64,000 bases of DNA from assembly GCA_002269645.1 (NCBI GenBank), contig NIVC01002433.1, forward strand, positions 1 through 64,000, written 5' to 3'. This DNA is from Macrostomum lignano (taxonomy: Eukaryota). A model generated the notes under the pieces. That model saw nothing but the letters and a program-made list of their open reading frames with translations. It searched no databases and was not told where the DNA came from. Numbering within the stretch: the first letter of the stretch is position 1; each line of letters opens with the position of its first letter. Below are positions 1-64,000 of the stretch, one piece after another. A program made the position numbers and the translations under genes.

Positions 1-1410
1 TTCTTGAGATCATAAACATAGATGTTACAATGGCTATAAGCAGTCTTCGGCTCGGGGAGCCCCAGGCCCCGATAAGATCCCAATGTCGTCCTCAAGAAGG
101 GCCTGAGCCCCAACTCCATCAGGGTGCTTACTAAGCTGTTCAATACTTGCTCCCTGCTTGGGTACTTTCCCAAAGCCTGGAAAAAGGGAATCATAAAGAT
201 GATTCCCAAACCCGACAAACCCAAAGGTCAAATTGACAGCTACCGCCCCATCTGCCTAACTTCCTGCTTAGGAAAATTATATGAAAAAATACTCGCTAGA
301 AACTTTCGAACCATTCTTGAAAACCGTAACATTATTAGTTCCGATCAATGTGCATATCGCCAAGATCACTGCACCTTTGACAACATAGTCAGGATCACAG
401 ATGACGTTCTAAAAATGCTGCAGCTTGGGCAATACACCCTTGGTGTCTTTTTTGATGTTAAGGGCGCCTTTGACGGCGTTTGGCATGACTCGCTACGCCT
501 TGATCTTCTCGACAGTGATCTTCCTCACAGCCTCATGAGGTCCATTTCTAGCTACCTTGACGACAGAGAAGTGCTGGTCCAGGTTGGGGGGCCCTGAGTG
601 AGAGCCTCAACCCGGCGGCAGGTGTTCCCCAGGGAGGTGTCCTCTCGCCGCTCCTCTTCCTGGTTTATGTCAACAAAATTCCGCTTCCTGCTGACAGAAA
701 GGTTCGCATTAGTCAGTACGCAGATGACCTGGCCGTTTGGGCCAGCGCCAGAACTTCATCACTTTCTGCTAAGCTGCTAAATGCCTACTTCAAGAAGCTC
801 AAAATCTGGTTAGACGAGGTTGGGATAATTATCAACCCAAATAAGAGCAAAGCTATTTCTTTTTTCAAGCCCTTGGGCAATCACCGGACAGGACCTGATA
901 GGCCCCCTTGCTGCTTGGCAATCAGTCCATTCCTTACTATGACTCTGTGCGTTTTCTAGGAATTATCCTTGATAAACAGCTCACCTATAAACCTCATCTC
1001 ATCAAGGTAATTAATTCTGCGCAGAACAAGCTCCTTGCGCTGCAGCGCCTTGCTAGTAAGACCAAAATCTCCCAGCAGGGGCTTAGACTGATTTATAGGA
1101 TGTATATTGAGAGCTGCATAATTTATGGCGCTCCAGTCTTGATACACCTCAGGATGCTCAACTCAACAAGTTGCAGCTGCTACAGAACAAAGCGCTGAGA
1201 ACGTCACTAGACGCTCCACTGTGCACTAAAATTAGTTACTTACACTACATCACCAAAATGCCGATGATCAAAGAGCGCATTTGGAATCTAGCCAAGCGCT
1301 GGTACAGAAACACCGAGATGTCTGGAGTACACAACTTCGACCTAGACACCAAGAAATGGGATAGGAGAGGGTTCAGGATGCCTGCAGTGGCCCGTCTGAG
1401 AAATGTCTAA
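1..1410 (+). pseudogene. Frameshifted LINE ORF2 reverse transcriptase (element A)
   Basis: ORFs 124-597, 908-1198 and 1171-1410 join via frameshifts near 590, 900 and 1160. No RNase H follows the RT. Confidence 0.9.
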
Positions 1411-2071
1411 TGTGGCACCCATGCTGTGCTTAGGTTCAACTGTGAGCAGTATTGTCAAACAAGAGCAATTATTGATTAAAACCTAACAAACTCTTGATGT
1501 AATTGTAAAAAAAAATGAAATCTCAAATAAATCTGTGATAAAAAATTTTTTACATTAGAAAATATTCATGACAATACATGTATACAATTTTATTGTACAA
1601 CTAACAATTATTTCATTTTATGCCATATTCCAAATATTTAATGCCAATATGCCAAATATTCAATATACAATAACACTGACGCAACTTTGCCTATACCCCT
1701 CGCCTCTTTGTGCTCTGCTTCATCTTCTGTCTCTCTCCCGACTTTGAACTGTACATGTTTTAATCATCTCTACTGTTTTAATTTGTTTTTACATCTCCTC
1801 ACAATTTCCTTTTTCGATTTGTTCTAATGCCTTCGTTCTCTTCATCTTCGATTCACCTTAGTCAGATTTGTTTTATTGCTTCGATTGCTACTTTATATAT
1901 TATCTGATACACTGTTTTATTTGTTTTATTTTATGCACTTTTTAACAAAATATTGAAATCGAATGTCAATAAAAACTCGATAACCTACAAATACATTGTG
2001 CGTAAAGAGCCGAAAAGGCTGAAGCGCCGGGCCTATTTAAGCCCGAATACTCAACAATGAATGAATGAATG
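1..2071 (+). mobile_element. LINE A: 3' part of a Jockey/I-group non-LTR retrotransposon (RT, 3' UTR, (AATG)4 tail)
   Basis: RT motifs across frameshifts: SYRPICLTSCLGKLYEK, FFDVKGAFDGVWH, GVPQGGVLSPLLF, QYADDL (~715-735), FLGIILDKQLTY. AT-rich UTR 1411-2055, then AATG x4 at 2056-2071. The 5' part lies outside the window. Confidence 0.93.
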
Positions 2072-2415
2072 TTGTTTTCCTTTATTCCGTACCTGCTCAA
2101 CTTGCTTGCTTAACACCGCCTGCTCTACATTGCCTGCTCTACATCTCCTGGTGCTCTCCGGCTCTACAGCAGCATCGCACTACGTGCAGGTCCTACATCG
2201 GTCTTTATCTGCACCGGCGTCAGCGGCTACGCACTGCGTACTGGTCCTACTTCTTGGTGGCGGCGGCGGCTCGGTGGCTTGGCTCGGTGGCGGCGCCGTC
2301 GGCTCGTGCGAGACAGCGGCTTTTAGCGCCAGACTTAACGCTTTCAAAGATGCTTGACTGCTTGACTGCTTGATCATCAAAGATGTCCTCCCGCAAGCCT
2401 TTCACCATCTAACTA

Positions 2416-3012
2416 ATGGTAGACCAGAAAAAAAGAAAAATTGTCTGGTACGGCCCGGCATACACCTATTCCGGTGGTAGTCTGGAAGCCAATGAGGCCT
2501 GGTACCCGGAGTTAACCAAGCTAGTTACCTGGCTCCACGTCGAACTTGGGCTACCACTGTTCAACTCCGGCCTAGTAAATTTTTACGAATCGGGGCATGT
2601 TAACATCCCCTGGCACGCTGATGACGAGACCGAACTTGGCCCCAATCCGACAATAGCCTCTATTTCGCTGGGAGCTACAAGAGAATTAGCCATTAGATCC
2701 AAGCAGTCCAAAAACATTGTTTTTAAGCAACCTCTCGAGTCTGGCAGTTTGTTGGTAATGAGTGGTGCAACTCAGAAATATTTTGAGCACAGCATCTACA
2801 AAGACCCTAAAGTAAAAGACATTCGCGTTAATCTCACCTTTCGAATGACTTCTGAAAATCTGGTCTCCGAGTCTCCAGCGCCCTCGTTGAACCCTTGCGT
2901 TCGCCAGTCGCAGGATCTCATCACTCCCACTGATGATCAGCAGTCATCTCTTGCGACCTTGATGACCAAGACTCTATTCGTAGAAAAGCTGAAGAAGAGC
3001 GAGTCAACCTAG
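2416..3012 (+). CDS. AlkB / 2OG-Fe(II) dioxygenase domain (ALKBH2/3-like), N-terminal part of LINE B ORF1
   Basis: RKIVWYG..YTYSG, FNSGLVNFYESG, WHADDE (His 2614, Asp 2620), IASISLGATR, LESGSLLVMSGATQ, FEHS (His 2788), RVNLTFR (ends 2844). This is the classical AlkB HxD..H..RxxxxxR signature. Confidence 0.92.
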   Translation: MVDQKKRKIVWYGPAYTYSGGSLEANEAWYPELTKLVTWLHVELGLPLFNSGLVNFYESGHVNIPWHADDETELGPNPTIASISLGATRELAIRSKQSKNIVFKQPLESGSLLVMSGATQKYFEHSIYKDPKVKDIRVNLTFRMTSENLVSESPAPSLNPCVRQSQDLITPTDDQQSSLATLMTKTLFVEKLKKSEST

Positions 3013-3881
3013 AGAAAATCAGAAGGGCTAGCCAATCCAGCATTAAATCCAGCGCCAACAATAGCCAGTCCAGGCAGACCAAATCTGCACCAGTCATCTT
3101 CGAAGTCGCCCTGGAAGGAAATGATCCAATATAGTTTGAGTGGCTGCTAAAGACTAATTTCCGTAACGTAAGAATCAAATCAGTTAAAGATCTGTGCCAC
3201 TCACCTGGCTACATTGTCCACCCTGAGCATCCCAGGGACTTCAATACGCTCTTAACAGCTCCAATGAAAATCAGCTCAATTAATGACTTTGAAGTCACCA
3301 GGCGCACTGCTGCTAAGAGACCTGTCCACCAAGCTAATGACCAGCCGAGGGTTCGAGCCCCCCTCAAATCTCCGAACGTTCTCTCCTTCATTGTCCGTAA
3401 CGTTCCGCTAGCGGTCGACGTAAGCGGTCTAGCCAAGCACCTAAATGACTCTGACCAGCAACTCTCAATAGATGGAGCAGTTAGAATTATCTCCAAACAG
3501 ACTGGCCAGCCGACTCCCTTCGTAAGGCTATTCACCAAGTGCCAAAGAGTAGTAGATAGCTGCATCCAACAGGGTATCTACCTAGGATTTGTGAAATATA
3601 GATGCGAAGAATCTAATAGTCTCCCGCCCGTCAGAGCTATCCAGTGCAAGCGGTGCTCAGGACTCGGTCACCATGAGGCGCGCTGCACAGCAAACTATAG
3701 GTGCAACAAATGCGCTGGCAATCATTTCTCAATGGATTGCCCCAAAGACCAAGTCTTCAAGTGTGCAAATTGCGGCGAAAACCATCCGGCATTCTCATTC
3801 AAATGCTCTAAAGTCCGAGAGGCTAACGAATTGGCAACCGCAAAGAACATGACCGAATCCGAAAGCAACAACAACAGCTGA
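2952..3881 (+). CDS. LINE B ORF1 central and C-terminal part: RRM-like region plus three Gag-type zinc knuckles
   Basis: CKRCSGLGHHEARC (CX2CX4HX4C), CNKCAGNHFSMDC (CX2CX3HX4C), CANCGENHPAFSFKC (CX2CX3HX6C), the typical Jockey/I/R1 ORF1 triplet. The same frame extends back to 2952 with one internal TAG near 3130. Confidence 0.88.
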
Positions 3882-4511
3882 GAGCCCATAAGCCAGAAAA
3901 CAGCCAGACCCTTGGGGAAACCTTCGGCGTCCCTGGGCCAATCTCCTACGCAGATGCCATGCGTCCGCAGCCGGTTCTCGGGCCAATAGCCTTCTCTAAC
4001 CGAGCTGCCAAAGCTGCCGAAGCCCAACGAGCATCATTCCCCGCCTCATCTGCCAATGCTGCCGCCGCCGCCTCAGTCGCCTCAGCCAACCAGAATGCTC
4101 TGTCTGATGCAATCAACACATTTGAGCCGCCAACAACTGCTCCAGCCAATCCGGTCATGATGCATCCAGGAGTTGAATCAACTAACCAAATAGGACCAAG
4201 TGAGAGGGGCTTTTTCTCTCGGGAAGATGTGCTCGATGTAGTGTTACAGGCGCTCGACCGACTCATGAACATTGAACAAGGACGGATGTTCACATCCTGG
4301 GAGGCGGGGCAATCGTCTTCCGGGTGGTGTCTGAAGTCGTTAGGGTGTTCAGGTGTCAAAGAGGGCCTGTTGCTGAGTCAGGGGACACCAAAGTCGTGCA
4401 AGCGAACGGAGGTGAAACCTGAACTCTCTTTCTATAGTCTGCTTAGCTCTGCTCTATTAATTCAACTCTCCTCGTAATACTTCTACGACTAAGACTAAAA
4501 GTCACTCTGTT

Positions 4512-5186
4512 GTGCGGGACTCCCTCATTATTGGACACCTGAACTGCAACGGGCTCAGCAACAAAATCTATGAGATAATCTCGTGGCTAAAAAATGAGGA
4601 CTTAGACATAGGACTTTTCTCTGAAACTGGCTTAGTTGACACAAACCCTTTCTTTGTCCAAGACTACGCCATCCTTAGATTTGATAAACCTCACTGTAGA
4701 AGAGGCCTCGCAGTTGCTTACAAAAATAATCTAAACATTATGAATGTCAAAAAGTATTTTGATAACAGTAACCATGAGTTTATTAGCTTTGAGGTTTTCT
4801 TAAAGCATAATAGGCTAAACAAACTTAATATAGTCCTCTTCTACAGGGCGCCTAACCCTACCAAGCTAAACTGCGACATTCTAAAAAATCTTTTCACAAA
4901 TTCCTCCACTTTGGTTATAGGGGACTTCAACTGTAACCACTCTGCCCTAGGTGGAGACACAAATTACAATTACCCCGGCAGACAGCTCTTTGACTGGCTT
5001 GAAAACCACCCCAACCCCCCTATTTTATTAAATAACTATGGTGAATTCAGCAGAGTGTGTAATCGTGGCGGCTCCCACACCGCTAATGAGCTGGACTTGG
5101 GGCTTTGCTCCCCCAATCTTGGTCCTCACACTAGTGAGGTTCCCATAGGTGATGACATGGATAGTGACACTTTCCCATCATCATAA
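4512..5186 (+). CDS. APE-type endonuclease of LINE B ORF2
   Basis: HLNCNGL, DIGLFSET, GLAVAYK, IVLFYRAP, VIGDFNCNH, ELDLGL and SD motifs. Confidence 0.92.
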   Translation: MRDSLIIGHLNCNGLSNKIYEIISWLKNEDLDIGLFSETGLVDTNPFFVQDYAILRFDKPHCRRGLAVAYKNNLNIMNVKKYFDNSNHEFISFEVFLKHNRLNKLNIVLFYRAPNPTKLNCDILKNLFTNSSTLVIGDFNCNHSALGGDTNYNYPGRQLFDWLENHPNPPILLNNYGEFSRVCNRGGSHTANELDLGLCSPNLGPHTSEVPIGDDMDSDTFPSS

Positions 5187-5639
5187 AAGTTTACCTTGAC
5201 CCAAACTGTAAAATTTCGAACCCCCCCCCTAAAAGCTTCTGGAGCACTGATTGGGAAACCTTCAGGGCTGTTCTCCAGGACAAACTCAGTGATAAACTAA
5301 TCAACTATCTCAGGTTGGCCACTCCAGCTGAATTAGATAGGGCTGTAGACCTGCTAACCCAGGGCTTGCACGACACGATTGAGGAGGTGATCCCAAACAG
5401 AGATCCCGCGGACAACTCCCCCCAGACATAATAGCAAAAATTAAACACAGGAGGAAACTTAGAAAACTCTTTAGAAACACCCGGATTGACCATTTTATGA
5501 TTCAGGCGAATCAAGCCGCTAAGGAGATCAGGCTCGCCATCCGTATGCATAGATATAGGAAGTTTGAAAAGTTATGCAAAAAAATTTCCAAAACCAGCTA
5601 CCGAAATGAACCAAAATTTTTTTGGATTGATATAAAAAA

Positions 5640-6853
5640 ATGACGGGGGAAGGTCCTAAACCGATCTCGTACCCCCCAATCGTTCTCAAGGATTCTGTTG
5701 CTGAAACTGAAGCTGAGAAAGCACAGGCCTTCAAGGAGTTCCTTGAGGCTCAGATGCGTCCCTGTCCAGACAGATCCTCCCAGCTCTATAAGAGAATTGA
5801 GGCCCAAAAAGATCATGAGATCTACAAACCCCATAACATCTTAGCTGCGTTAACCTATCATAAAGACCATGCCGATCCTGATAATCCAGACAAAAAAGAC
5901 ATTGAAGCTGATATTCTCAACATCATAGATCAGGATGTTCTTTGGGAGAGTAGGAAGCTCAGGGCAGGAGGGGCTCCCGGGCCTGACAAGATTCCGAACA
6001 TTGTCCTCAAATTTGGCCTGAGTCCAGACTCCATCAGAGTCCTTGCAAAGATCTTTAATGCTAGCTTCCTCCTTGGATACTTCCCAAGCGATGGAAAATG
6101 GCTACTGTCAAAATGATACCCAAACCAAATAAACCTAAAAACCTCATTGATAGCTATAGGCCTATCAGCCTTACCTCTTGTTTAGGCAAGCTTTATGAAA
6201 AAACCTTAGCATGTCTGCTAAAATACTCAATGACTACTTTATCCGACTCAAAAGGTGGCTTGATGCCGTTGGCATTACTATTAATCCCTCTAAAAGTAAA
6301 GCAATCTCCTTCTTTAAGGCAAATGGCAACAAAACAGGCCCGGGTGAACCCCTGATCAAACTCGGGAACAACATAATTAGTTATTATGACACTGTCACCT
6401 TTCTTGGAATGGTCCTAGACAAACAACTCAACTACAAATCTCATATTAACAAGGTCGTTGGTTCTACCACAAATAAGGTTGCTGCGTTAGCCAGAATGGC
6501 AAAAAGAATCTCCCAGCACGGACTAGGACTGATCTACAGGTCTTTCATTGAAAGTACCATCACTTACGGTGCTCCCATCCTTCTTAATCTTCCCGACTTC
6601 CAAGTCAACAGAATTCAGGTACTCTAAAACAAGGCTCTGCGCATCTCCCTTGATGCTCCGCCTTACATAAAAAACTCTTACATCCACTTGGTCACCAACA
6701 TGCCCATGATCAAATATCGCCTACTTAGCCTAGGGAAAAATGGTTCAAAAAGCGTTAGTGGTATTCACAAATTCAAAGATGACACCAAAGAATGGTTGAG
6801 ACCCGGCTTTCGAGTCCCGGTCACAGCTGCGCTCAGGAAAAAACTTAATGCCT
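5640..6853 (+). pseudogene. LINE B reverse transcriptase with frameshifts and an internal deletion
   Basis: APGPDKIPN, SYRPISLTSCLGKLYEK, then an abrupt jump at ~6208 to SAKILNDYF...FLGMVLDKQLNY. The AFD, QG and YADD blocks present in element A are absent. Confidence 0.88.
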
Positions 6854-7834
6854 AATTTATAGCCAGATTCCTGGCTATAAAACAAATATTGTGCTTTTCA
6901 GTTGGAGTTTGGTCTGTCGACCCTCTTCCCTTTGTATAATTGCAATTTTTTGCCGTATGACGGAACGGCTCCCGAAGTTATCGCCTGCCTTCCAAGGGGT
7001 ACTAGCATTGGCTAGGCTGCATAGCCCTCTCTATCCACAGCTCCCTCAGGCGGGGACGTTTTAAACCTGGAACCCCAAACCAGGTGGACCAAAAGGCCCT
7101 TAACTCTGACTGAGTGAGCTGTTATTCACCCCGTAGGGTCCAGTTAGCTATTTATACGGACAAAGTTTGACTCGACTAGTTTGATTAGGATTTGACATTA
7201 TATATTGATTATTCCTTGGAATAATTGATTAAAATATAGACACGAGCACCTCTCTCCGGGAGAGAATCCAACCTTTACTGCAGGCGTATTCTAATTGATG
7301 ACTAAGTATTAATCCAATGCAATTATTTTTGTATTCAAATTATTAAGACATCATATTTTTTAAAAATATTGCCAACTGTTTTACCTCATTTTTTCCAATA
7401 TTGCTAAAAAACTTTTAATTTTGTCCAATATTGCTCAAATATTTTCTTTGTGTTTTATTCTTTGTTTTTAATCCTAAATTTATAAAAAAATGATCGTTTT
7501 AGTTTATTTCTCAAACTCTCAAATTCTTGTTTTACACTTGACCTCATCTTTTGTTCCTTTTTATACTAGTATTATTTGTTAATAGCTACCCCAAATATTT
7601 GTTTTATGTAAATACTCCTCGATTTTATTTTTTTCCTAAATTGGACGACTATAACTTCTAATAATTCGAACATACGCGTAAAAATATAAAGTTGCGCAAG
7701 AGGCCTTCAAAGGGCTGAGGCGCAGGGCAACATTATATTAGCCCCTACTTATTAAAGTAAAAAAAGTAAAAGTTGTTTTCATTTATTAATTTTGGCTTTA
7801 TTTTGTCAACACTTAGTACTAGCATCAATCTGCA

Positions 7835-8679
7835 ATGGAAGTAGAAGTCAATAGCAAAAGATGTGCCTCTAGAGACACTGACTCGCCGCCAGTCAGCACC
7901 AAGAAGGCCAACAACCGGTCCTCCTTCGGTCCAGACCAGAGGTCCTGTTCTGCGTCCTCCAGCAATGCGCCGACTTGTGTGCAACAGCAGACAGTGACTG
8001 AAGAACTTCATGTGGCCAGCGATGGTGAGAGCCAGCCTGTCAAGAGTAGTAAACTAGCAGACTTAGGAAAAGCAACTAAAATATTGATACTCAGTCTACC
8101 AGAACCAGACCTCACAGATGACAAAACTGGCCAGCCTTTAACTAACTGCAAAATTAGATATCTGCCAAATGCGCTCAAATCTTCTGAAGCCAAGCTAAAT
8201 AAAATTTTAATGGAAGACATTTATCCAAACTCATTCCACCATCTAACCAAGGGCAAGCCTGAGGCCAGGAAAATAGTTTGGTATGGGCTTGAGTACACCT
8301 ACGGGGGTACTAAGATTGAGTGCAACGACGCTTGGCACCCAGTCGTCACTCACTTAGCCATTTGGCTTCACGTCGAGCTTAGATTGCCACTAGCTAATTC
8401 GTGCCTGATCAACTTTTATAAAGATGGATCGGTAGCCATCCCATGGCACTCTGACAACGAACCAGAGTTAGGCCACGACCCGACCATTGTGTCGGTGTCG
8501 CTGGGAGCTCAGCGAGACTTCCAGCTTAGGACTAAGGGCCAGAGCCAGAATATAGTCTACTCGCAGAGGCTTGCCAGTGGTAGCATCACGATAATGAGTG
8601 GGCTACGCAACGGTTCTTGCAACACTCAATCACAAAGGACCTCAAAGTTAAGGAACCTCGAATTAATTTAACATTCAGA
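7835..8679 (+). CDS. AlkB / 2OG-Fe(II) dioxygenase domain at the N-terminus of LINE C ORF1 (1-nt frameshift at ~8601)
   Basis: RKIVWYG, NSCLINFYKDG, WHSDNE (His 8447, Asp 8453), IVSVSLGAQR. After a single-base shift it reads ATQRFLQHS (His 8623)...RINLTFR (ends 8679). Confidence 0.9.
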
Positions 8680-8796
8680 GTCACTAGTGATAACAGAATC
8701 TTCGACTCACCAGCTTCTTAGCCTGGCAATCCTTGCATCCAGCTTCCTGAAGAGGCCATCACCTGCGACCTCGATGACGCAGAGTCTGTACGCCGT

Positions 8797-9480
8797 ATGG
8801 CCAGGCAGGAGGCTGAAAACATTAGCAAAATTAGATCACGTTCCAGCAGTAACTCGAGGCGAAAAGCTAAATCCGACCAAACAGACCAAACTCAACCAGC
8901 CAATCAGCGGTCTCAAGCAACCACTCAGCAATCTAAACCTAACACTCAGCAGTCAGAATCTCAGAAGGTAGCTACTCAGCAGTCAAAGCCAAACACTCAG
9001 CAGCCAAACGCAGCCAATCAGCACACACAATCAGGCACTCAGCAACATTCGTCAAACACTCAGCAGAATCATGCAGCCAATCGGCACTCACAATCAGGCA
9101 CGCAACAATCACTAGCAGCCACTCAGCCAGGCACTCAGCAGTCAAAATCAGTTACTCAGCAGTCACAACCAGTCACTCAGCAGTCACCACCAGGCTTACA
9201 GCAAACACAACGAGAGACGCAGCAGACACAATCAACCAACCAATAAACTAATTTTGCAAACCAGACTCGACAGCCAGCTACGGCTAGCACTGTGAATTCC
9301 GTGCAGTCAACTAAACCTAAGCATCCAGACACTCAGCAATCAAGCACCCACACTCAGCAGCCTAATAGCTACCATCTGCCAGCAACTCAGCAATCAACCA
9401 CTCGCACTCAGCAGCAAGCACTCGCACTCAGCAGCCAAGCACTCACACTCAGCAGCCACAAGCACGCACTCAGCAGTCAA
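8797..9480 (+). repeat. Degenerate ACTCAGCAG-based repeats encoding a Q/S/T-rich linker in LINE C ORF1
   Basis: Many TQQS/TQQP units in ORFs 8797-9246 and 9292-9510. Confidence 0.75.
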
Positions 9481-9837
9481 ACTCACAACAATCTAATAAT
9501 TCTAAATTAACTAAAATTACGCCAGTTGTATTTGAGATGCCCTTTGAGGCCAAGAATCATATTAAATTCAAACATTAAAAAAAATTAACTTTCCTAACAC
9601 TTGCATCGTGTCAGTAAAAGAGCTGTATCATAGCTCAAGATACTACGTATTTACTAATTCTCCACACGACATGAACAACTTATTGACAACAACACTAAAA
9701 GTTAACGAAATTAATGGGCACACTGTCACTAGGCGCCTGCCTCAGGCCAACCGACACCTCTCATCAGGATGTTTACAAAGTCAAGGGCAACTTACGACAC
9801 CTGCCTGGAGAACGGCATAAAGCTTGGGCACTGAAAT

Positions 9838-10107
9838 TCCGGTGCGAAGAACCGCACAACCTTCCACCGGTCAAGGAGATTCAGTGCCACAGGTGTCAAG
9901 GCCTTGGACACACCGAAAGCAGGTGCAACGCCGGTTTTGTGTGCAACGTGTGCCGGGACGCACTATTCCGGCGACTGCCCCAAAGATACGGGCTTTAAGT
10001 GCGCTAATTGTGGGGGTGAAAACCCGGCGTTCTCCTTCAAATGCCCAAAGGTTCAGCATGCAAATGAGAGGCGACTGAAAAAGAGCATCATAGGATTCAA
10101 GCTTTAA
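9838..10107 (+). CDS. LINE C ORF1 zinc-knuckle region
   Basis: FRCEEPHNLPPVKEIQCHRCQGLGHTESRC, CNVC/AGTHYSGDC (frameshifted), CANCGGENPAFSFKC; collinear with element B. Confidence 0.85.
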   Translation, partial: SGAKNRTTFHRSRRFSATGVKALDTPKAGATPVLCATCAGTHYSGDCPKDTGFKCANCGGENPAFSFKCPKVQHANERRLKKSIIGFKL

Positions 10108-10159
10108 GACTTAAATTCGAACAGACTAGAAAATTAGAACCTACTCAAACACTAGCTGA

Positions 10160-11155
10160 TGTAGTGAGCCGCTAGTTTATGGTTAGGCGTCGCCCTTGTC
10201 AGCTGTTCCCTCGCCCTCGCCCTGGGTTGCTGTCTGCCGCTGGTCAGCTTCCCACCCCCCCTTTTGTCTGCTTGTTGTCGCCCGCCCTTTTGTCGCTCGG
10301 TTGCGTCTCTGTTCTCAGCCCCCAGCCTCTCGGCTGTTAGCTGTCTCTGTTTCGCTCCCGTCCCGTTTTCCCTGTCTTGTGAGCAAGTCACATGACAGTT
10401 CTTGCGTTCTTTGAGTCTTAAAGTGCAGTAAACATGTTTACTGCACTCGTTGGCCCTGTTTACCGGGTGAGTCACGTGCTTTCGGACCCCTCCCTTCTCT
10501 AAGGAGAGGAGTGACTCATGTTGCTAAAAATAGCAACTGAGTCACAGCCGCGTGTACTCTGGCCGGGGACCTCAAGTGACGTCAGTTCTAAAAATAGAAC
10601 AATTCACGAGGTCTTCCGCGCGCTTGTACCCTGCCCGAGACTCTCGAGTGACGTCAGTTCTAAAAATAGAACAAGTCACGAGGTCTTGAGCGCGGGTGTT
10701 TCCCGGCTATAAATAGGAGCCCTCTCCCCCTTGTTTCCGTCAAGGAGTCTTCTTTCTGTTCAACCTCGAGTTCTACGTCTGCGTGTGACTAAATCCCGAG
10801 TGTCTGAGCCTTTGCGCATATTGATTCTATTCCTATTGCTCCGACTGAAACCCGACCAAGTCAACCCAAGTCTACGAGAGGCTAACTCAGCCCTCCCTCT
10901 ACCATCCTAGCCCGGCAGGTACTGCTGACGAGACGCCCTATTCGTTGCGCTCTAAATCTGCACGCTGTGCTGTGTTCGTTGACTTCATTATTTCGTTCCG
11001 ACGGGAAGCTCACCTCACCGAAGGCCGAGACCTGAAGGAACTGATGGCAGCACTACCTACGCTACTGAGAGTTGAGAGAACTTCCCACTGAAGAGGCTCG
11101 AGTCTTAAGGTAATCCTTAAGTGCCTAAACCGGCAAGAAACCCAACTGTACTTCA
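10160..11155 (+). mobile_element. Probable 5' LTR of Gypsy element 1
   Basis: TGTAGT...ACTTCA termini (imperfect inverted), TATAAATA at 10708-10715, followed by a PBS and gag. No matching 3' LTR was found in the window. Confidence 0.7.
10468..10715 (+). promoter_or_regulatory. LTR enhancer/promoter: 3 MEF2-consensus sites, 3 AP-1 sites, 2 CRE sites, TATA box
   Basis: CTAAAAATAG at ~10524, 10588 and 10660; TGAGTCA/TGACTCA at 10468, 10512 and 10538; TGACGTCA at 10577 and 10649; 41-bp direct repeat with 72-bp period. Confidence 0.6.
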
Positions 11156-11156
11156 C

Positions 11157-11176
11157 TGGTGACGCAGCGGTGAGAT
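11157..11176 (+). other. Primer-binding site, tRNA-Leu-like
   Basis: TGGTGACGCAGCGGTGAGAT versus the tRNA-Leu 3' complement TGGTGGCAGCGGTGGGAT, 1 nt after the LTR-terminal CA. Confidence 0.6.
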
Positions 11177-12418
11177 CCGACTACGACACACCCAAGCCAA
11201 CCTCTCTTTCGAGAACGACATCGGCCAGTAACTACTACGAGTTCAACATGTTCAACGAACGAGACGAGAGCCGGTGCAGCAGCCGGCTGGATCAGCACAT
11301 CAGCAGTTCGAGGCCTGCGGCAGCGGACGCCGCAGCAGCAGCAGCGATCAACGACTTTGGTCAGCAGCCAACGCCGAGGCAAGGTGCGAGAAGCGAGGTG
11401 TCCGACGACCCGCCAGACGAGCTTCTGCAAGGCCTGGACAACATCGGCCGGAACATCATGCACCAGGACGTGAGGACCATCATGGCAGCTCTGCAGCAGC
11501 AGATGGAGCGGCCCGTGAGTAAACAAGTTAAAATTGTGAAGTTTACTCCAAGTCAGGACATTCATGTCTGGCTTGCCGCGTTCGAGCAGCGTTGCGAGAT
11601 GGAGCGCATCGTCGACCCGTTCGAGATGAAACAACACCTCATCGCGAGTCTTGATTTGGCTACTGCGTATCCTTCCTTGCTTAGTATGAATCTTCCGCGT
11701 TTCGCCAGCTACGAGGAGGTCAAGCAGCGTCTGATTGAGCGATTTGCCCGTCATGGTGGTGCTGATGAGTACAGAGAACTGTTGCGACGTCGTCAACAAG
11801 GCAAGAATGAGTCAGCAGAAGAGTTTGCTGACGCCCTGAGAACTCTTGGTGAACGTGTATCCTCGGATGCACCCTGAAGACCACGAGAAGGAGATTGCGG
11901 ATCAATTTCTTGCTGGTATTCGGACGACTCCAGACCTGCGTGAACGGCTGTACTGGGTCCGCCCAAATAATCTTCTTGCTGCGATTCGAGAACTACGACG
12001 ACTAGAAGGCGCCAAAGAATTGGCGCAGCGAACCGCTCAACCCCCGGTTAGGATGTTGGACGGGGAGCAGGACGGCGACCCGAAGCCCGACGTCACCGCC
12101 CAAGCCTTGCTAACTCTAACCGACTTGATCGAGAAGCAGCAGCGACTGCTTGATCACCTAGTGCAGCGTGACCAGCAGCAGGTAGCAAGTCCGCCGCAGA
12201 GGGCCATAGTCCGTTATGGCTGCGGACAGCCAGGTCACCGCATTACCCAGTGCCCGATGCGCCAGAACCAGGGAAACGGCCAGGCGGAGAGCGACAACGG
12301 CACCGCCCTCCGCGAGGTCCAAGTCCAGGCTACGTGGCAGACTCCGAGAGGTCACCAGAAGAAGAGGATGTCGGCTGTGCAGGCGCCAATGCCCACTCCG
12401 ACAGTCGCTCGTCAGTAA
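11170..12418 (+). pseudogene. Gypsy 1 gag (frameshift at ~11860; degenerate zinc knuckle)
   Basis: Retrotransposon gag-like WLAAFEQRCE...YEEVKQRLIERF...RRQQGKNESAEEFADALR, DQFLAGI, and knuckle RYGCGQPGHRITQC (first Cys replaced by Arg). Confidence 0.85.
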
Positions 12419-15400
12419 GTGACGCGGAGTGCGGAGGTTTCGTGGACACCTCCCCGAATCAAAAAATCCATGCGCGTGAGGCCGATCCGTACGTCACAGG
12501 TCGAGTTGCGAGTCGAGAGGTCCCTTTCTTGCTTGACAGCGGCAGCCGGAAAAACTTTCTTGGTTCGTCAACCTGGGCCGCTATTAGACGCCGGATGCCT
12601 CGTTGTATTATATCGCATGCTATTCCCGATTGCGTAACTATGTATGATGGGACGCAGCTCCCACTTGCTTGTAAGGTGACCATTCCGGTGGAGTTCGGTG
12701 ATGTCGTCGCGGACACCGAATTCCTCGTCATGGTCTCCGATTGCGAAAATTTGCTTGGCGTATCGTTTATGCGAGAGCACTGCCAGAACTTGGACTTCGC
12801 TCAAGGAATGTTGAAGTTTAACAATGGCGCGTGCATCCCCGTTCGTTATTCGCGGCGTGAGCTTCAGAACTGCCGAGTGTACACCTCTGAGAAGTGCACC
12901 CTGCCGCCTAGAAGTTCAGCGCTGCTTGCCGTCAGACTGGATGACGGCCACCCTGAGAATCGAGGATCGCCATCAATTGTCGAGCTGGTTAAGTCGAGGC
13001 TGCATCCCAGCTGCAACGCTCTGGAAGCAGCGCCTGCTCTGATGACGATGCCTGAAGGTCGCGGCTACATTGAGGTCGTCAACACCGCCGACAGCGAGGT
13101 GTTCCTGCAAGCCGGTATCCGTGTTGGTGTTGCAACCCCACTCCGAACTGCCGACCTGATGTACTTGAGCGAGACGCCCGAACCTGAAGTGCGACACCTC
13201 CCGAAGAACTCTGAAGAGTCCAGCACAGCATGGCTAGATGAAGTCGAGATCAACAGCGAATTGTCCAAAGAACAACATCAAAGAGTGCGAGATCTACTAG
13301 TCGAATGTCAAGCGGCCTTCTCCAAGCACTCGCTAGACGCCGGCCTGACTCACCTGGTGACCCACGAGATCATCTTGAAGGACCGGACACCAGTCGCGCT
13401 ACCACCGCGCCGAATCCCGCTTCATCTGAAGGACAAACTCGACGCCCTGCTGGACGAGATGTTGGCGAAGCACATCATTCGCCCTGCCTACTCGAGCTAC
13501 AATTCGCCAATGCTCATCGTGCCCAAGAAGGACGGCAACATCCGACTAGTCCACGACTTCAGAGCTCTCAACAACAGGTGTGTGTATCACCCGTATCCGC
13601 TGCCGCACATCCAGGAAACCTTCGCGAAGCTTCGTGGTGCTCAGTGGTATTCCAGCTTGGACCTTGCTCAAGGATTCTGGCAGATCCCGCTGCGCGACTG
13701 CGACCAGCACTTGACGGCATTCTCAGTAATCGACCGCGGCCAATTCTGTTTTAACGTTCTACCGATGGGTCTCCACGATAGTCCCGGCAGCTTTCAGCGT
13801 TGCATCAATAAGCTCCTGGACGGCCTGACGCCAAGGACTGCGCTTGGCTACATGGATGACATCGTGGTGCACTTAGTGACTTTCGAGGAACAGCTGGATA
13901 ATTTGCGAACTGTACTCCAGCGCATCATCGCAGCCAACCTCAAAGTGAAACCGAAGAAGTGTCATTTGTTCCTCAAGGAGCTGCATTATTTAGGTCACGT
14001 CCTGACTCCCGACGGCCTGAAGACCTGTGAGGACAAGATTGCGCAGATCCGTGATTGGCCCGTGCCACAGTCCGTTACTTAACTGAGACAATTCCTAGGC
14101 CTCGCCAATTACTACCACAAGTTTGTCGACGGCTACGCTGGAGTGGCTGCGCCGCTGCATGCCCTGACGCGAAAGGACATTGGCAGCCTGCGGCAGCACT
14201 GGACTCCCGAGCATCAGGTAGCGTTCGACACCTTGAAGAAGAAATTGTGTTCTACTGAAGTTCTCGCTCTGCCTGAATTTAATTCTGATCCTGCTGTGAA
14301 GTTTGTCCTCGACACGAATGCCTCTGATATTCGAATAGGCGCTTGCCTTGGACAACTGCAATCCGACGGCGTCGAACGTCCAATTGCATTCTTTAGCCGT
14401 AAACTTCGCGATCCTGAGAAGCGCTACACGGTCACGAAGAAAGAGCTGCTTGCAATTGTGGACGCTATGCGACATTTCCGTCATTACCTAATCGGCAAGA
14501 AGTTTGAAGTTCGATCCGATCATCGGGCCTTACTGTGGTTACTGAACCAGACTCAGGCCACAGGTATTTTAGGCCGCTGGATCGAACGCCTAAGCGAGTT
14601 CCGCTTCCAGCTCAACCACCGCAAGGGCAAGGACCACGCCAACGCTGATGCCCTGTCAAGAGGACCGGAGGCGCCGCCGATCTCCTTCGAGCATGGCAGA
14701 CTGCTAGAGCAACCTGGTTCTACAGCCCGACCCGGTGACGACCACGACCTGGAACCGGATTTGGACCCGAAACCCGAGGCCACTGCCAGAGCAGCCCTCC
14801 TGAAGACAGTCCACTCTCGCTGCTTGGAGGCCGAGACTGACCTGGACGAAGACCTGGAAGCCACCGCGCCAGCAGCCTTCCAGCACGACGCCCACCGCTG
14901 CAGTCAACGCCTGGAGACCGGCCTGGACGACAACTCAGAGGCCACTGCGACAACAGTCCTCTGCCGCGATGCCCATGCCGCCCGCTGCAATTTGGAGACC
15001 AACCTGGACAAGACCTTGAGGCCACTGGGGACACAGACCTTGACGACGCCCAAGACTACAGGTCTCGGACTCTGAAGACGCACACGGACCAAGATTCAAA
15101 GGCCACCGCACCAGCAGCCCTTCTGATGACGGCCCGCAACGCAACTCCAGGCAAGCAATTTAACTACAACCCCTCCGAGCCTTTCGCTGAGATTTCTCGC
15201 CGTGTTGACAGAGGCCAGAATCTCGCGCCAGCTGCAAGGTCGAAGCTCTGTCCCCCGGGCCGACAGACAGCTGCTCATCGCCTGTGCGGAAAGTCGAGTC
15301 CCCCTTTGCGACACCGTCCAGTGCAGGAGAAGACTCACCCAATTTCGACGACGACTGAGCCGACGGCTACGGCTGCCTGTGACGAGGCGTGCTTCACGTG

Positions 15401-17654
15401 TTGCGTCCCGCCCTACAGCCAAGAGTCGCCTGGGCTAGGCAGTGGAGGCATGCGCGCTGCTCCATCTGCGGAATTTTCTGTCAAGAGAGCGACGATGAGA
15501 ACTTCGATTCGAGATCAACGGACGTACTCCGACGTTGAGACAAAGTCCCTCGGAGCGACCTAATCCTGACGCCGACAAGACGGTGCCGTGTGATCGACTT
15601 GGAGCCATTAAAGCGGAGACTGCGGGAATCCGGACCCCTCAGCCATGCCACGCTGTGCTCACTGATTTTCTGAAGCTGCCGATGACTCGCCAACAGTTCG
15701 TTGACGCCCAACGCGCTGACCGAGCCATCAGCTACGTGCTCAACCTGGTCGAGAACGAAGCCCCGAAGCCTGAGTTCGACGCCCGGTTGCGACTGACGAA
15801 GGAGCAGCGGAACCTGCTCGGATACTACGATAACCTGGAGGAGGACAACGGCCTGCTGCTGATTGACCTGTCCGATGGCCAGCAGCCGCCAAAGGTTGTT
15901 CTGCCTGAGGCCCTTGACGCCCAGGTGCTCCAGGAGCTCCACAGTTCGCCACTGTGTGGACACCTCGGCGAGACGAAGACGTTACTGCGGCTACTCTGGA
16001 GACCCGGATTAGCCCGTGCTACCAAGACCTTCATCAGTAAGTGCCGCACCTGCCTTGAAAGTAAATCGCGACGGCGAGAGAGAGTTCCGGTCCAGAGCTT
16101 CCCAGTTTGCGAAGTTCTGGGTAGAATCCACTGTGATGTAGTAGGACCGATCGCGCAGGAGAGCAAGAGCGGCAACCGCTACATCATGACCTTGTGCGAT
16201 GCGCCGTCGAAGTATCCATTCGCCTACCCGATGAGAAACCAGGAAGCCAAGACAGTCATCAAGCTTCTGCAGGAGCGCTTCATCCCCGAGTTCGGTGTAC
16301 CATGCTGGATCCACACCGACCAAGGCACCAACTTCACCAGTTCGGCCTTCAAGAAGTTCTGCGACCTGTTTGGCATTCGGAATACGACAACAACACCGTA
16401 CAATCCAGCTTCCAATGGACAAGTCGAGAACCTCAACAAGCAGTTGAAGAGTGTCCTCACCTGTCTGCTCGAGCGCAACCACAACGACTGGGACACCTTC
16501 CTCCCGGCCTGCCTGATGGCTCTCCGCTCCAGCGTGCACCCGGTGACCGGTTTCACGCCTCACTACCTGGTGTTCGGCCGTGACTTCCGACTCCAGATCG
16601 ACAACGCGCTGAAGAAGCTGCCCTAAAGAAGCTGCCCGAGTATGCCGACCTGCCCGACTACGTCAAGGACTTCCAACGTCGCCTGGACGAGGCGACTGAG
16701 CTAGCCAAGGAGCGCCTGCATCTGCACCAGCAACTGCGAGACGAGCACTACTCGAACCTGCCCGCCGCCAAGAAGCTTCAACCCGGTGATCTGGTCTTCC
16801 TCAACAATCCGGTGCTTGAACCGGACGAGGCGGAGAAGTTTCATCGACAGCGCAAAGCACTGTACGAAGTTGTCGAGCCTAAGGGCGAGGTTGTCTACAA
16901 GATTCGACGGAGACTGCCCAACCCGAGAGCTAGACGAGACGAACTAGTCGTCCATCGCCGGAACCTTCTGCTCGTGCCTGACGCTGACTACACGAGGACA
17001 TCTGATCCTGAAGTCGACAAGCCGAAGAAACGCCGGCGGCCGCCCGACGTCCCCGATTGCGCAGGACCCGCGACCCTGACGCCGATTCCCGAAGACGACC
17101 AGGACGACCCCGACGATGATGATGATGACGGCTACGACGCAAGGCCGGCCTTCCGATGGCACTTCCGGCCTTTGGCGATCCCGGAGGTGCAGCCAGGAGG
17201 TGGACCGGTCACGACACCAGCGAACCAGGCAAGTGCACTTCGGCGTGAGCCAGTGCCGTATGGTGAATGTCATTTGCATGAGCCTGTTCTTGATGCGTCT
17301 ATGCCTGCTGTTTCTTTTCCGCCCGTTTCTGCTCCCGTCCCCAGTGCTGATTTTTCTGTGGTCCAGACCCCTGGGCCGTCGCTATGCACCACTCCGGTGG
17401 AAGCGCCTGTAGGAATTGTAGATGCCGGTAGGCCGGCTAGGAATCGTAGGCAGCCTGAGAGGCTGATTATTAATCCTAGGGCCAAGACTTATGTTAGCCG
17501 CATCGCCCGCATCCGCTCGCAAATTGAACCGCATTTCAGCACAGAAATGCACCGCCGAGCATTCAAGCGCACTGAGCGCTCGCCAACCGAAGAGGACCGA
17601 GCCTCTTCCCGCCGCAACCGGCCTAGGACGGAGTTGCCGTTTCCAACGGACTAG
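12250..17654 (+). pseudogene. Gypsy 1 pol: protease, RT, RNase H, repeat linker, integrase (disrupted)
   Basis: LLDSGS protease; YNSPMLIV, YPLP, SSLDLAQGFWQI, YMDD; in-frame TAA at 14080; DTNAS/KELLAIV/SDH/ADALSR RNase H; H-H-C-C and CDVVGP/TDQG/VENLN integrase; frameshift at ~16625 from a short duplication; C-terminal domain to 17654. Confidence 0.95.
14745..15140 (+). repeat. About 5 degenerate 81-bp repeats between RNase H and integrase
   Basis: CCTGGAC anchors at 14841, 14922 and 15003 (81-bp period); 27-aa LETxLDxxxEATA units. Confidence 0.75.
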
Positions 17655-17659
17655 GCGAG

Positions 17660-63870: not shown

Positions 63871-64000
63871 TGTACATTTGCGCTGAAGCCTGCTAGATGC
63901 TATTCTTGACATAAATGTAAATCATAAAAAAAACAGTAAAGTCAGTGTTGCTGAATATGTGGAGTTTAATTTTATTGATGAGTCTTTCAGAGACAATTCA

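What the first reader, a model, noticed from the sequence alone, without database searches (positions are those of the whole stretch)
2380..3881. LINE retrotransposon whose ORF1 begins with an AlkB (ALKBH2/3-like) dioxygenase domain
Seen: a complete AlkB fold (WHAD, His 2788, RVNLTFR) lies 5' of the three zinc knuckles, APE and RT of LINE B. The knuckle frame runs back to 2952, overlapping the AlkB ORF tail, so one frameshift and one stop separate them, as expected for a decayed single ORF1. Established: ALKBH2/3-type enzymes oxidatively remove m1A and m3C from DNA or RNA; AlkB domains occur in replicases of plant RNA viruses (Alpha-/Betaflexiviridae, Closteroviridae); m1A/m3C impede reverse transcriptases. 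Inference: ORF1p coats the element RNA, so a fused AlkB could erase damage or host methyl marks from the template or cDNA, as repair or counter-silencing. I am not aware of a characterised AlkB-ORF1 LINE, but I cannot run a literature or Repbase search.
Basis: partly seen in the sequence, partly recalled or inferred. Interest (0 to 1): 0.93.

Follow-up and report, generated by a model that had tools for sequence, protein, structure and literature searches.

The report
LINE retrotransposon carrying AlkB demethylase domain
Two dead copies of a flatworm-type LINE retrotransposon in this window encode, in the same first gene as their RNA-binding domains, an ALKBH2/3-like enzyme domain that removes methyl damage from nucleic acids; intact relatives elsewhere show the fusion is real and conserved, and I found no published report of it.

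Summary
Window 2416-2850 encodes an AlkB dioxygenase core: Pfam PF13532 E=9e-28, and an AF2 model that matches human ALKBH3 at TM 0.92. All cofactor residues are intact. It lies 5' of two RRMs, three CCHC knuckles, APE and RT.

A second copy, 60% identical at the protein level, lies at 7835-10107 with the same domain order. Both copies are dead. Copy A has 2 stops and 4 frameshifts in ORF1 and a deleted RT core. Its ORF1 really spans about 2061-4420.

An exhaustive HMMER search found intact single ORFs of 757-962 aa with AlkB, RRMs and knuckles. One 9-kb contig carries such an ORF1 followed by an intact APE-RT ORF2. Several Macrostomum lignano proteins match too, named only "Fe2OG dioxygenase domain-containing".

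Between diverged lineages the AlkB domain is as constrained as the RRM and CCHC domains (dN 0.24-0.30, against about 0.6 in the linkers).

AlkB also sits in ORF1 of three other retroelement designs: an esterase-type LINE, a coiled-coil-type LINE and a Penelope-like element.

The likely role is cis repair of m1A and m3C, which block reverse transcription, on element RNA or cDNA. This is inferred, not tested. The only retrotransposon AlkB found in the searchable literature is the orchid Ty3/Gypsy ALKBH5-like case.

The parts
2004..2100 (+). Copy A: conserved 5' leader block (gaaaaggctgaagcgccgggc ... gttgttttcctttatt), shared with copy B at about 7690-7790. It places the element's 5' UTR upstream of AlkB.
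   Evidence: Pairwise DNA alignment; sequence read.
2061..2357 (+). Copy A: inferred ORF1 start (ATG 2061) and N-terminal region. It is in the same frame as the N-terminal part of the AlkB domain and ends at the in-frame TGA 2355-2357.
   Evidence: ORF list and frame translations. A GGGGSVA motif is shared with the M. lignano protein P0001.
2331..2850 (+). Copy A: AlkB (ALKBH2/3-class Fe(II)/2OG dioxygenase) domain. The N-terminal part 2331-2429 is in frame 0, with a stop at 2355 and a frameshift in the A-run 2428-2443. The core 2428-2850 is in frame 1. It carries NxY (2560-2586), HxD (2611-2628), His (2788) and RxNxTxR (2824-2844).
   Evidence: Pfam E=8.7e-28. PDB ALKBH3 E=2e-24. AF2 pLDDT 96. 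Foldseek ALKBH3 TM 0.92-0.93. Motif table.
2851..3086 (+). Copy A: AlkB-RRM linker with the conserved motif ISCDLDDQDSIRRKAEEE. The frameshift 1->0 lies at about 2930-2950.
   Evidence: tblastn of intact ORF1s. Alignment with P0001, P0157 and P0009.
3087..3610 (+). Copy A: two RRM-fold modules of ORF1, with TAG at 3132-3134 inside the first.
   Evidence: AF2 model, pLDDT 80. Foldseek best hits are tandem RRM proteins such as Pub1, HuR and hnRNPA2B1.
3645..3806 (+). Copy A: three CCHC zinc knuckles.
   Evidence: Coordinates. Cys and His are invariant in the ORF1 alignment.
3830..4420 (+). Copy A: ORF1 C-terminal region (GETFGVPGPISYADAMRP ... VLDVVLQALDRLM). It is reached through frameshifts at about 3830-3880 and about 4303-4312, and is homologous to the C-termini of P0008, P0014 and P0157.
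   Evidence: tblastn; alignment.
4512..5186 (+). Copy A: ORF2 apurinic/apyrimidinic-type endonuclease.
   Evidence: Pfam Exo_endo_phos_2 and Exo_endo_phos. tblastn with the intact L001 ORF2, residues 11-230.
5392..6855 (+). Copy A: ORF2 reverse transcriptase remnants in three frames. The RT core, equivalent to L001 ORF2 residues about 563-722, is deleted near 6211-6226. The stop is at 6853-6855.
   Evidence: tblastn; ORF list.
7835..8700 (+). Copy B: ORF1 start (ATG 7835), N-terminal region and a second AlkB domain. The domain runs about 8144-8679 with a frameshift at about 8600. HxD is at 8444-8461, His at 8617-8631 and RINLTFR at 8659-8679. It is 60% aa identical to copy A.
   Evidence: Pfam E=4e-20. 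tblastn. Frames. Coordinates.
8758..9500 (+). Copy B: conserved linker motif ITCDLDDAES (8758-8787), then an expanded Q/T/S-rich repetitive linker.
9513..10107 (+). Copy B: RRM remnants (9513-9880, three frames) and three CCHC knuckles (9885-9926, 9940-9978, 10000-10044). The element is truncated right after, with no APE or RT.
   Evidence: tblastn; frames.
52..1410 (+). A third related LINE, RT 3' half only, head-to-tail upstream of copy A. An A-rich tail lies at about 1504-1512.
   Evidence: Pfam RVT_1; tblastn with L001 ORF2 residues 481-925.

Best explanation
The window holds two decayed copies, from two diverged subfamilies, of a non-LTR (LINE) retrotransposon family of a Macrostomum-like flatworm.

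Its ORF1 protein is a single polypeptide. From N- to C-terminus it has a short N-terminal region, an ALKBH2/3-class Fe(II)/2-oxoglutarate dioxygenase (AlkB), a linker, two RRMs, three CCHC knuckles and a helical C-terminus. ORF2 encodes APE and RT.

In live copies the AlkB domain is most likely an active oxidative demethylase. LINE ORF1 proteins coat the RNA that encoded them, so the enzyme would be held on the element's own RNA and on the single-stranded DNA intermediates of target-primed reverse transcription. There it would remove N1-methyladenine and N3-methylcytosine, which block Watson-Crick pairing and stall reverse transcriptase. That would raise the yield of full-length insertions. 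This is the retrotransposon counterpart of the AlkB domains in plant RNA-virus replicases.

Shown here: the architecture, the intact catalytic motifs, the ALKBH3-like fold, intact relatives, and purifying selection on the domain. Inferred: catalytic activity, substrate, cis action and the benefit to retrotransposition.
For: Domain identity:
- Pfam PF13532 at E=8.7e-28 for copy A and 4e-20 for copy B.
- ALKBH3 E=2e-24 to 2e-27, ALKBH2 about 1e-17 to 1e-19, E. coli AlkB only 3e-5.
- AF2 pLDDT 96. Foldseek TM 0.92-0.93 to ALKBH3 and 0.90 to ALKBH2, against 0.71-0.76 for EcAlkB, ALKBH5 and ALKBH6.

Fusion is real:
- Two collinear copies lie in the window.
- Intact single ORFs exist: P0010 (757 aa), P0011 (962), P0012 (843) and P0013 (892).
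- L001 is a full element, ORF1 843 aa plus ORF2 948 aa with APE and RT. L003 has ORF1 plus APE.
- M. lignano proteins have the same order.

RNA-binding context: tandem RRM folds plus CCHC knuckles.

Selection:
- NxY, HxD, H and RxNxTxR are kept in every lineage.
- AlkB aa identity is 61-68% and dN 0.24-0.30. That equals RRM and CCHC (dN 0.23-0.36) and is far below the linkers (about 0.6). dN/dS is about 0.11 where computable.

Analogy: viral AlkBs repair m1A and m3C and prefer RNA (PMC2553587).
Against: - No biochemical or genetic test exists for any of these proteins.
- The two window copies are dead, so nothing here functions in situ.
- dS is saturated, so dN/dS values are rough.
- Substrate cannot be read from sequence. 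ALKBH2/3-class enzymes also act on DNA, and ALKBH3 on tRNA.
- Related ORF1s without AlkB exist (P0022, P0037, P0040 and others), so the domain is dispensable for this LINE lineage in general.
- The host species of the intact contigs is unknown, and the LINE clade could not be named.
Confidence: 0.6

Rival explanations
1. Epitranscriptomic counter-silencing. The ORF1 AlkB erases an enzymatically written regulatory mark on the element's transcript, such as m6A or programmed m1A. This would let the RNA escape host decay or sequestration. The precedents are the orchid Gypsy ALKBH5-like protein and the effect of host ALKBH9B on the plant Onsen element.
For: - A retrotransposon-encoded AlkB with in-vitro m6A demethylase activity exists (PMC9289625).
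- m6A influences L1 and Onsen mobility (PMC7873242 and PMC10686560, listed).
- Tethering the enzyme to the RRM and CCHC domains fits an RNA substrate.
Against: The domain is ALKBH2/3-class by sequence and fold, not ALKBH5 or FTO class. TM is 0.92 against 0.73-0.76, and E=1e-27 against no sequence hit. The established main substrates of the ALKBH2/3 class are m1A and m3C. In mammals m6A promotes L1 rather than repressing it (abstract of PMC7873242).
Confidence: 0.15
2. DNA-side repair. The domain acts on single-stranded DNA rather than RNA, either the nicked target or the first-strand cDNA. Alternatively it removes 3mC that DNA methyltransferases introduce as collateral damage when the host methylates transposon DNA.
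For: - ALKBH3 and ALKBH2 are DNA repair enzymes, and the best structural matches are ALKBH3-ssDNA complexes.
- DNMT1/3 generate 3mC and co-evolve with ALKB2. M. lignano is reported to retain DNMT1 and DNMT3 (PMC9246332).
Against: ORF1p is an RNA-binding cytoplasmic RNP component. Nothing suggests it reaches genomic copies of the element. The RRM and CCHC context favours RNA. Methylation patterns in free-living flatworms are unknown.
Confidence: 0.15
3. The AlkB fold has been co-opted as a non-catalytic nucleic-acid-binding or oligomerisation module of ORF1p.
For: P0136 carries a second AlkB-like repeat that has lost the HxD motif. Degenerate, presumably non-catalytic copies can therefore persist.
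Against: Every metal-binding and 2OG-binding residue is retained in all other retroelement AlkBs, across about 40% sequence divergence. A purely structural role would not require that.
Confidence: 0.05
4. There is no real fusion. The AlkB ORF is a host gene fragment, a transduced exon or an assembly artefact that happens to lie 5' of a LINE.
For: None beyond the fact that the window copies are broken by stops and frameshifts.
Against: - Two diverged collinear copies share 5' leader blocks.
- The linker between AlkB and the RRMs is conserved and coding.
- Several intact single ORFs come from independent sequencing runs.
- M. lignano gene models match.
Confidence: 0.01

Closest known systems
LINEs with type I ORF1p (RRM plus CCHC knuckles; Jockey, I and CR1 group of non-LTR retrotransposons; modular ORF1 as reviewed in PMC4120745)
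   Same: The layout is two ORFs. ORF1 has RRM folds followed by three CCHC knuckles, and ORF2 has APE then RT without RNase H. AlkB-less ORF1 homologues with the same RRM-RRM-CCHC layout exist (P0022, P0037 and others).
   Different: An N-terminal AlkB dioxygenase of about 190 aa is added. That paper does not mention AlkB, oxygenase or 2OG. The exact clade could not be named with the tools at hand.
Esterase (SGNH) domain in ORF1 of CR1/L2-type LINEs (PMC3905857)
   Same: It is a precedent for a bona fide enzyme domain inside a LINE ORF1 protein. One relative found here (P0136 on L008) combines AlkB with a C-terminal SGNH-like region.
   Different: The enzyme class and presumed substrate differ: lipids against methylated nucleobases. 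The window elements have no esterase.
AlkB domains in replicases of plant RNA viruses (Alpha- and Betaflexiviridae, Closteroviridae; PMC544882, PMC2553587)
   Same: A selfish RNA-templated replicator carries its own AlkB. Viral AlkBs are shown to demethylate m1A and m3C and to prefer RNA. The logic is the same: protect the template.
   Different: The viral domain sits inside the replicase polyprotein of RNA viruses of plants. Here it sits in the RNA-binding ORF1p of an animal retrotransposon, and the polymerase it would serve is a reverse transcriptase.
paALKBH5-like protein of Phalaenopsis Ty3/Gypsy elements (PMC9289625)
   Same: It is the only retrotransposon-encoded AlkB found in the searchable literature. 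Its cofactor residues are conserved, and a role against host RNA-level control was proposed.
   Different: It is an LTR element of plants, the AlkB is in a separate ORF2, and it belongs to the ALKBH5/9B/10B subfamily with m6A activity. Here the element is a LINE, the AlkB is fused to ORF1, and it belongs to the ALKBH2/3 subfamily.
Human ALKBH3 and ALKBH2
   Same: Identity is 39-43% over the core, TM is 0.90-0.93, and all Fe(II) and 2OG ligands are present.
   Different: The LINE domain lacks the ALKBH3 insertion PPPEENGDYTYVERVK. In the CCHC-type LINEs and the Penelope-like copy, the WxQ segment of cellular AlkBs is replaced by an LLPxA motif. The domain is fused to RRMs and knuckles. Its phylogenetic origin, host or bacterial-like, is unresolved.

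Membership tests
AlkB family, ALKBH2/3 subgroup | Significant match to the AlkB-type 2OG-Fe(II) oxygenase profile (PF13532), above the curated cutoff | tested here: met
   Copy A scores 98.3 bits and copy B 73.3 bits, against a cutoff of 31.2. Intact relatives score 98-108 bits.
AlkB family, ALKBH2/3 subgroup | Fe(II) triad HxD...H, 2OG-binding RxNxTxR and the NxY motif | tested here: met
   All are present in window copies A and B and in every retroelement AlkB aligned.
AlkB family, ALKBH2/3 subgroup | Double-stranded beta-helix fold closest to ALKBH2/3 rather than to EcAlkB, ALKBH5, FTO or ALKBH8 | tested here: met
   AF2 pLDDT 96. TM is 0.92-0.93 to ALKBH3 and 0.90 to ALKBH2, against 0.75 to EcAlkB and 0.73-0.76 to ALKBH5. 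Sequence E-values are 2e-27, 2e-19 and 3e-5.
AlkB family, ALKBH2/3 subgroup | Fe(II)/2OG-dependent demethylation of m1A and m3C | not testable with these tools
   Needs recombinant protein assays.
Non-LTR (LINE) retrotransposon | ORF2 with an N-terminal APE endonuclease followed by RT, downstream of ORF1 on the same strand | tested here: met
   Window copy A has APE at 4512-5186 and RT at 5392-6855, broken. The intact equivalent is on L001, with others on L003, L008 and L009.
Non-LTR (LINE) retrotransposon | Element termini: 3' poly(A) or simple-repeat tail and target-site duplications | tested here: inconclusive
   An A-run at 1504-1512 follows the first LINE. No clear tail or TSD was found for copy A or B. 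The 5' ends could not be fixed because related contigs were identical over their whole overlap.
Type I ORF1p (RRM plus CCHC) | At least one RRM fold followed by CCHC zinc knuckles in ORF1 | tested here: met
   Two RRM-fold modules. Three CCHC knuckles with invariant Cys and His. Pfam zf-CCHC hit in P0013.
A named LINE clade (Jockey, CR1, I, R1, ...) | RT phylogenetic placement with reference elements | not tested
   No Repbase or Dfam reference set was available. The ORF2 homologue search returned unnamed proteins.
Viral AlkB domain (Flexiviridae type) | AlkB embedded in an alphavirus-like replicase polyprotein (methyltransferase, AlkB, helicase, RdRp) | tested here: not met
   The flanking domains are RRM and CCHC in ORF1, then APE and RT in ORF2. 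No viral replicase domains were found.
Orchid Ty3/Gypsy paALKBH5-like | LTR element with the AlkB in a separate ORF, of the ALKBH5 subfamily | tested here: not met
   The element is a LINE, the AlkB is fused into ORF1, and it belongs to the ALKBH2/3 subfamily.

The most novel reading that the evidence does not exclude
Reverse-transcribing elements of at least four unrelated designs have each recruited an ALKBH2/3-class dioxygenase into their first ORF. The four are CCHC-type LINEs, an esterase-type LINE, a coiled-coil-type LINE and a Penelope-like element. This would mean that methylation of the Watson-Crick face of template RNA or ssDNA is a general and so far unrecognised barrier to retrotransposition in animals. 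The methylation could be chemical damage, DNMT collateral 3mC, or a deliberate host defence. Elements would counter it with a template-tethered eraser.
Probability: 0.35. Interest if true: 0.9.

Novelty: new variant of a known kind. Interest (0 to 1): 0.78.

Why it matters
LINE ORF1 proteins are regarded as RNA-binding chaperones. The only enzyme domain described in them so far is the esterase of CR1/L2-type elements. A conserved nucleic-acid demethylase fused to the RNA-coating protein would mean some retrotransposons carry their own template-repair or mark-erasing activity. That would make lesions or marks such as m1A and m3C relevant to retrotransposon fitness.

It gives a directly testable system. 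Intact genes are available, and M. lignano has transgenesis. It also parallels the AlkB domains of plant RNA viruses and of orchid Gypsy elements.

Finding AlkB in ORF1 of three further retroelement designs suggests convergent pressure rather than a one-off accident.

There is a practical point as well. These many TE-borne copies, annotated only as 'Fe2OG dioxygenase domain-containing protein', can confound homology-based calls of host ALKB2/ALKBH3 presence in flatworm genomes. Such calls are used in arguments about DNMT-ALKB2 co-evolution.

Tried and rejected
- Word-indexed protein search with the RRM-knuckle ORF found nothing.
- Exact-sequence look-ups of the window ORFs and of P0001 found no contigs. 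The window's own source was therefore not identified. A Macrostomum-like origin is inferred only from best hits of 57-65% identity.
- The ORF2 homologue search gave no named clade.
- The Biopython NJ bootstrap timed out and was replaced by a numpy NJ.
- The AlkB tree is poorly resolved. The CCHC-LINE plus Penelope-like AlkB clade has only 32-37% bootstrap, so single or multiple capture within that group is open. P0126 and P0136 fall outside it in more than 98% of replicates.
- dN/dS is limited by saturated synonymous sites.
- The esterase assignment of the P0136 C-terminus is weak: Pfam E=0.004 and PDB 4c1b E=0.64, plus SGNH blocks seen by eye.
- The guess that the P0126 C-terminus is an L1-type RRM got no sequence support.
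- Comparing contigs to find element ends failed, because L002 is identical to L001 over its full length.
- Rfam and tRNA scans of the window found nothing.
- Rejected: host gene fragment or chance adjacency (see rival explanations).
- Rejected: AlkB as a separate upstream ORF0. It is in-frame with the RRMs in all intact relatives.
Full report
**What is in the window**

The region is a transposon-rich stretch of eukaryotic DNA. ORF 2416-3012 (+) matches Pfam 2OG-FeII_Oxy_2 (PF13532) at E=8.7e-28, far above the curated cutoff. Its best solved relatives are human ALKBH3 (E=2e-24) and ALKBH2 (about 1e-17).

- HxD in WHADDE at 2611-2628
- the second iron-binding His at 2788
- RVNLTFR at 2824-2844
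- the 2OG-stabilising NxY at 2560-2586

Downstream on the same strand lie three CCHC knuckles (3645-3806), an APE endonuclease (4512-5186) and reverse transcriptase remnants up to the stop at 6853-6855. An AlphaFold2 model of the uninterrupted core (2428-2850) has pLDDT 96. It superposes on ALKBH3-ssDNA crystal structures with TM 0.92-0.93 and rmsd 1.1-2.0 A, and on ALKBH2 with TM 0.90. E. coli AlkB, ALKBH5 and ALKBH6 reach only 0.71-0.76. The observation and the ALKBH2/3-class assignment are confirmed.

**Corrections to the anatomy**

The ORF covers only profile positions 48-194. The N-terminal strand and helix of the domain lie upstream in another frame (2331-2429). They are interrupted by a TGA at 2355-2357 and separated from the core by a frameshift in the A-run 2428-2443. 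That upstream frame is open back to ATG 2061, which is the likely ORF1 start.

After the knuckles, ORF1 does not end at 3881. Through two further frameshifts it continues to about 4420, in a region (GETFGVPGPISYADAMRP ... VLDVVLQALDRLM) homologous to the C-termini of intact relatives.

Copy A's ORF1 therefore spans about 2061-4420 and carries two stops and four frameshifts. Its ORF2 lacks the RT core, residues about 563-722 of an intact relative. This copy is dead.

Between AlkB and the knuckles an AF2 model (pLDDT 80) shows two alpha/beta modules. Their best structural matches are tandem RRM proteins. The ORF1 layout is AlkB, linker, RRM, RRM, three CCHC knuckles and a C-terminal helix.

**A second copy in the same window**

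At 7835-10107 there is a second element with the same order:
- an ATG, an N-terminal region and an AlkB domain (PF13532 E=4e-20, 60% aa identical to copy A)
- the same linker motif (ITCDLDDAES against ISCDLDDQDS)
- an expanded Q-rich linker, RRM remnants and three knuckles (44% identical)

It has at least five frameshifts and stops right after the knuckles. The two copies also share short blocks of 5' leader upstream of the coding region. They are too diverged for blastn. They therefore represent two old sublineages that both carried AlkB, which excludes a chance juxtaposition.

**Relatives elsewhere**

The word-indexed search found one close protein, a Macrostomum lignano 'Fe2OG dioxygenase domain-containing protein'. 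In it, AlkB and the linker are one frame.

I then ran an exhaustive phmmer search of 1.8 billion representative proteins, using a conceptual translation of copy A's ORF1. It returned uninterrupted proteins of 757, 962, 843 and 892 aa (P0010-P0013). Each starts with Met and holds AlkB, both RRMs, three knuckles and the C-terminal region. It also returned further M. lignano gene models (P0008, P0157, P0014, P0017, P0160, P0181).

The intact proteins come from assemblies of several sequencing runs. Contig L001 (9,079 bp) carries ORF1 (843 aa), followed by an intact ORF2 of 948 aa with APE and RT. L003 carries ORF1 (962 aa) followed by APE.

ORF1 homologues without AlkB also exist (P0022, P0037, P0040, P0058, P0068, P0101, P0117). 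In a tree of the RRM-CCHC part, the AlkB-bearing and AlkB-less proteins form the two sides of one split, with 52% bootstrap. This is compatible with one gain inside this LINE lineage.

**Is the domain maintained by selection?**

Two pairs of intact, diverged ORF1s were compared: P0012 with P0013, and P0010 with P0011. Synonymous sites are saturated (pS 0.6-0.8).

| ORF1 region | aa identity | dN |
|---|---|---|
| AlkB | 61-68% | 0.24-0.30 |
| RRMs | 57-65% | 0.29-0.36 |
| CCHC knuckles | 55-66% | 0.23-0.34 |
| Linkers and termini | 35-48% | 0.50-0.63 |

The one computable dN/dS for AlkB is about 0.11. The dioxygenase is thus at least as constrained as the RNA-binding core of ORF1. Together with full retention of the cofactor ligands, this argues for a catalytic role in live elements.

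**Wider pattern found on the way**

The same search turned up AlkB in the first ORF of three other retroelement designs.
- L008 is a metagenome contig. Its ORF1 of 1,596 aa has a degenerate AlkB repeat, a coiled coil, an intact AlkB and a C-terminal SGNH-esterase-like region. An ORF2 with APE and RT follows.
- L009 has an ORF1 of 717 aa with N-terminal AlkB and a coiled coil, followed by APE and RT.
- L004 has a 1,012-aa protein with AlkB, followed by an ORF with Penelope-type RT motifs (LPKIHK, GRPIVS) and a GIY-YIG nuclease.

In a neighbour-joining tree, the AlkBs of L008 and L009 do not group with the CCHC-type LINE AlkBs (1.5% of replicates or fewer). The Penelope-linked one groups with them only weakly (32-37%). 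The tree is poorly resolved. Several independent captures, or transfers between elements, are therefore likely but not proven.

**Mechanism**

LINE ORF1 proteins bind the RNA that encodes them and travel with it into target-primed reverse transcription. This is established knowledge of LINE biology and was not tested here. ALKBH2/3-class enzymes remove m1A and m3C, lesions on the Watson-Crick face that stall polymerases, including reverse transcriptases. Plant-virus AlkB domains repair these lesions and prefer RNA (PMC2553587).

The best-supported reading is therefore a template-tethered repair enzyme that keeps the element's RNA, and possibly its cDNA, readable by its own RT. I put this at about 0.6.

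The rivals are:
- erasure of a regulatory mark such as m6A, as in the orchid Gypsy ALKBH5-like protein (PMC9289625). This is less likely given the subfamily.
- action on ssDNA, including DNMT-induced 3mC. M. lignano is reported to keep DNMT1 and DNMT3 (PMC9246332).
- a non-catalytic role.

**Novelty**

Ten full-text searches found no description of an AlkB domain in a LINE or a Penelope-like element. They combined AlkB, ALKBH or 2OG-FeII with non-LTR, LINE, ORF1, retrotransposon, retroelement, Penelope-like or Macrostomum. The only retrotransposon case is the orchid Ty3/Gypsy ALKBH5-like ORF.

The library lacks most subscription journals, and Repbase and Dfam could not be searched. Priority therefore cannot be claimed with certainty. 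Public databases hold the M. lignano proteins only under automatic names.

I rate the finding a new variant of a known kind: a LINE with a new enzymatic ORF1 domain, and a new host class for selfish-element AlkBs. Interest is 0.78.

Noticed in passing
window 1-10130: Three related LINEs lie head to tail on the + strand: an RT-only 3' part at 1-1512, copy A at about 2004-6900, and copy B at about 7690-10130. AT-rich spacers separate them. Whether this reflects insertion into each other's tails or a tandem structure was not resolved.
   Followed up: partly
window 10130-18200: Copy B ends abruptly after its knuckles. A GC-rich Ty3/Gypsy-type LTR-retrotransposon interior follows: a gag-like ORF at 11170-12418, RT at 12250-14082, RNase H at 14143-15075 and integrase at 15535-16626. 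No LTR pair and no continuation of copy B downstream was detected.
   Followed up: partly
window 33377-34861 and 26089-26862: There is a second Gypsy-type fragment (RNase H plus integrase) and a DDE_3 (Tc1/mariner-like) transposase ORF.
   Followed up: no
window 19928-21728; 30115-30451; 58809-59460; 61827-62492; 63257-63871: Several satellite-like tandem arrays are present: a 50-bp unit x35 with strong GC skew (0.56), a 54-bp unit x6, two different 15-bp units x44 each, and a 7/46-bp unit.
   Followed up: no
window 8800-9500: The AlkB-RRM linker of copy B is expanded into imperfect Q/T/S-rich repeats (TQQS.., SQ..). The M. lignano homologues P0008 and P0157 also have a long Q-rich linker. The linker seems to be a hot spot for low-complexity expansion.
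   Followed up: partly
window 2353-2376: A short tandem repeat, cttgactg x about 3, overlaps the in-frame TGA (2355-2357) that breaks the N-terminal part of copy A's AlkB domain.
   Followed up: no
L004 2120-7398 (SRR19430222 contig): This is a Penelope-like element (RT motifs LPKIHK and GRPIVS plus GIY-YIG). Its upstream 1,012-aa ORF contains an intact AlkB domain. That AlkB shares the LLPxA motif with the CCHC-type LINE AlkBs.
   Followed up: partly
L008 242-9031 (ENA ERZ23489742 scaffold_855) and L009 248-4609 (JGI 3300086443): These are two further full or partial LINEs with AlkB in ORF1 but different ORF1 designs. One has a degenerate AlkB, a coiled coil, an intact AlkB and an SGNH-esterase-like C-terminus. 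The other has AlkB and a coiled coil. The host organisms are unknown.
   Followed up: partly
M. lignano proteins P0008, P0157, P0014, P0017, P0160 and P0181 (UniRef A0A1I8JCX4, A0A1I8GKP7, A0A1I8HIG4, A0A267DYY1, A0A267EIX3, A0A267DK61): TE-borne AlkB copies are annotated only as 'Fe2OG dioxygenase domain-containing' or hypothetical proteins. Homology-based statements that M. lignano retains ALKB2 (PMC9246332) could be confounded by them.
   Followed up: no
L001 4346-4717; L006 3269-3643; L007 3177-3551: A small ORF of 123-124 aa with no Pfam hit lies between ORF1 and ORF2 in two diverged intact elements. Whether it is conserved coding sequence was not examined.
   Followed up: no
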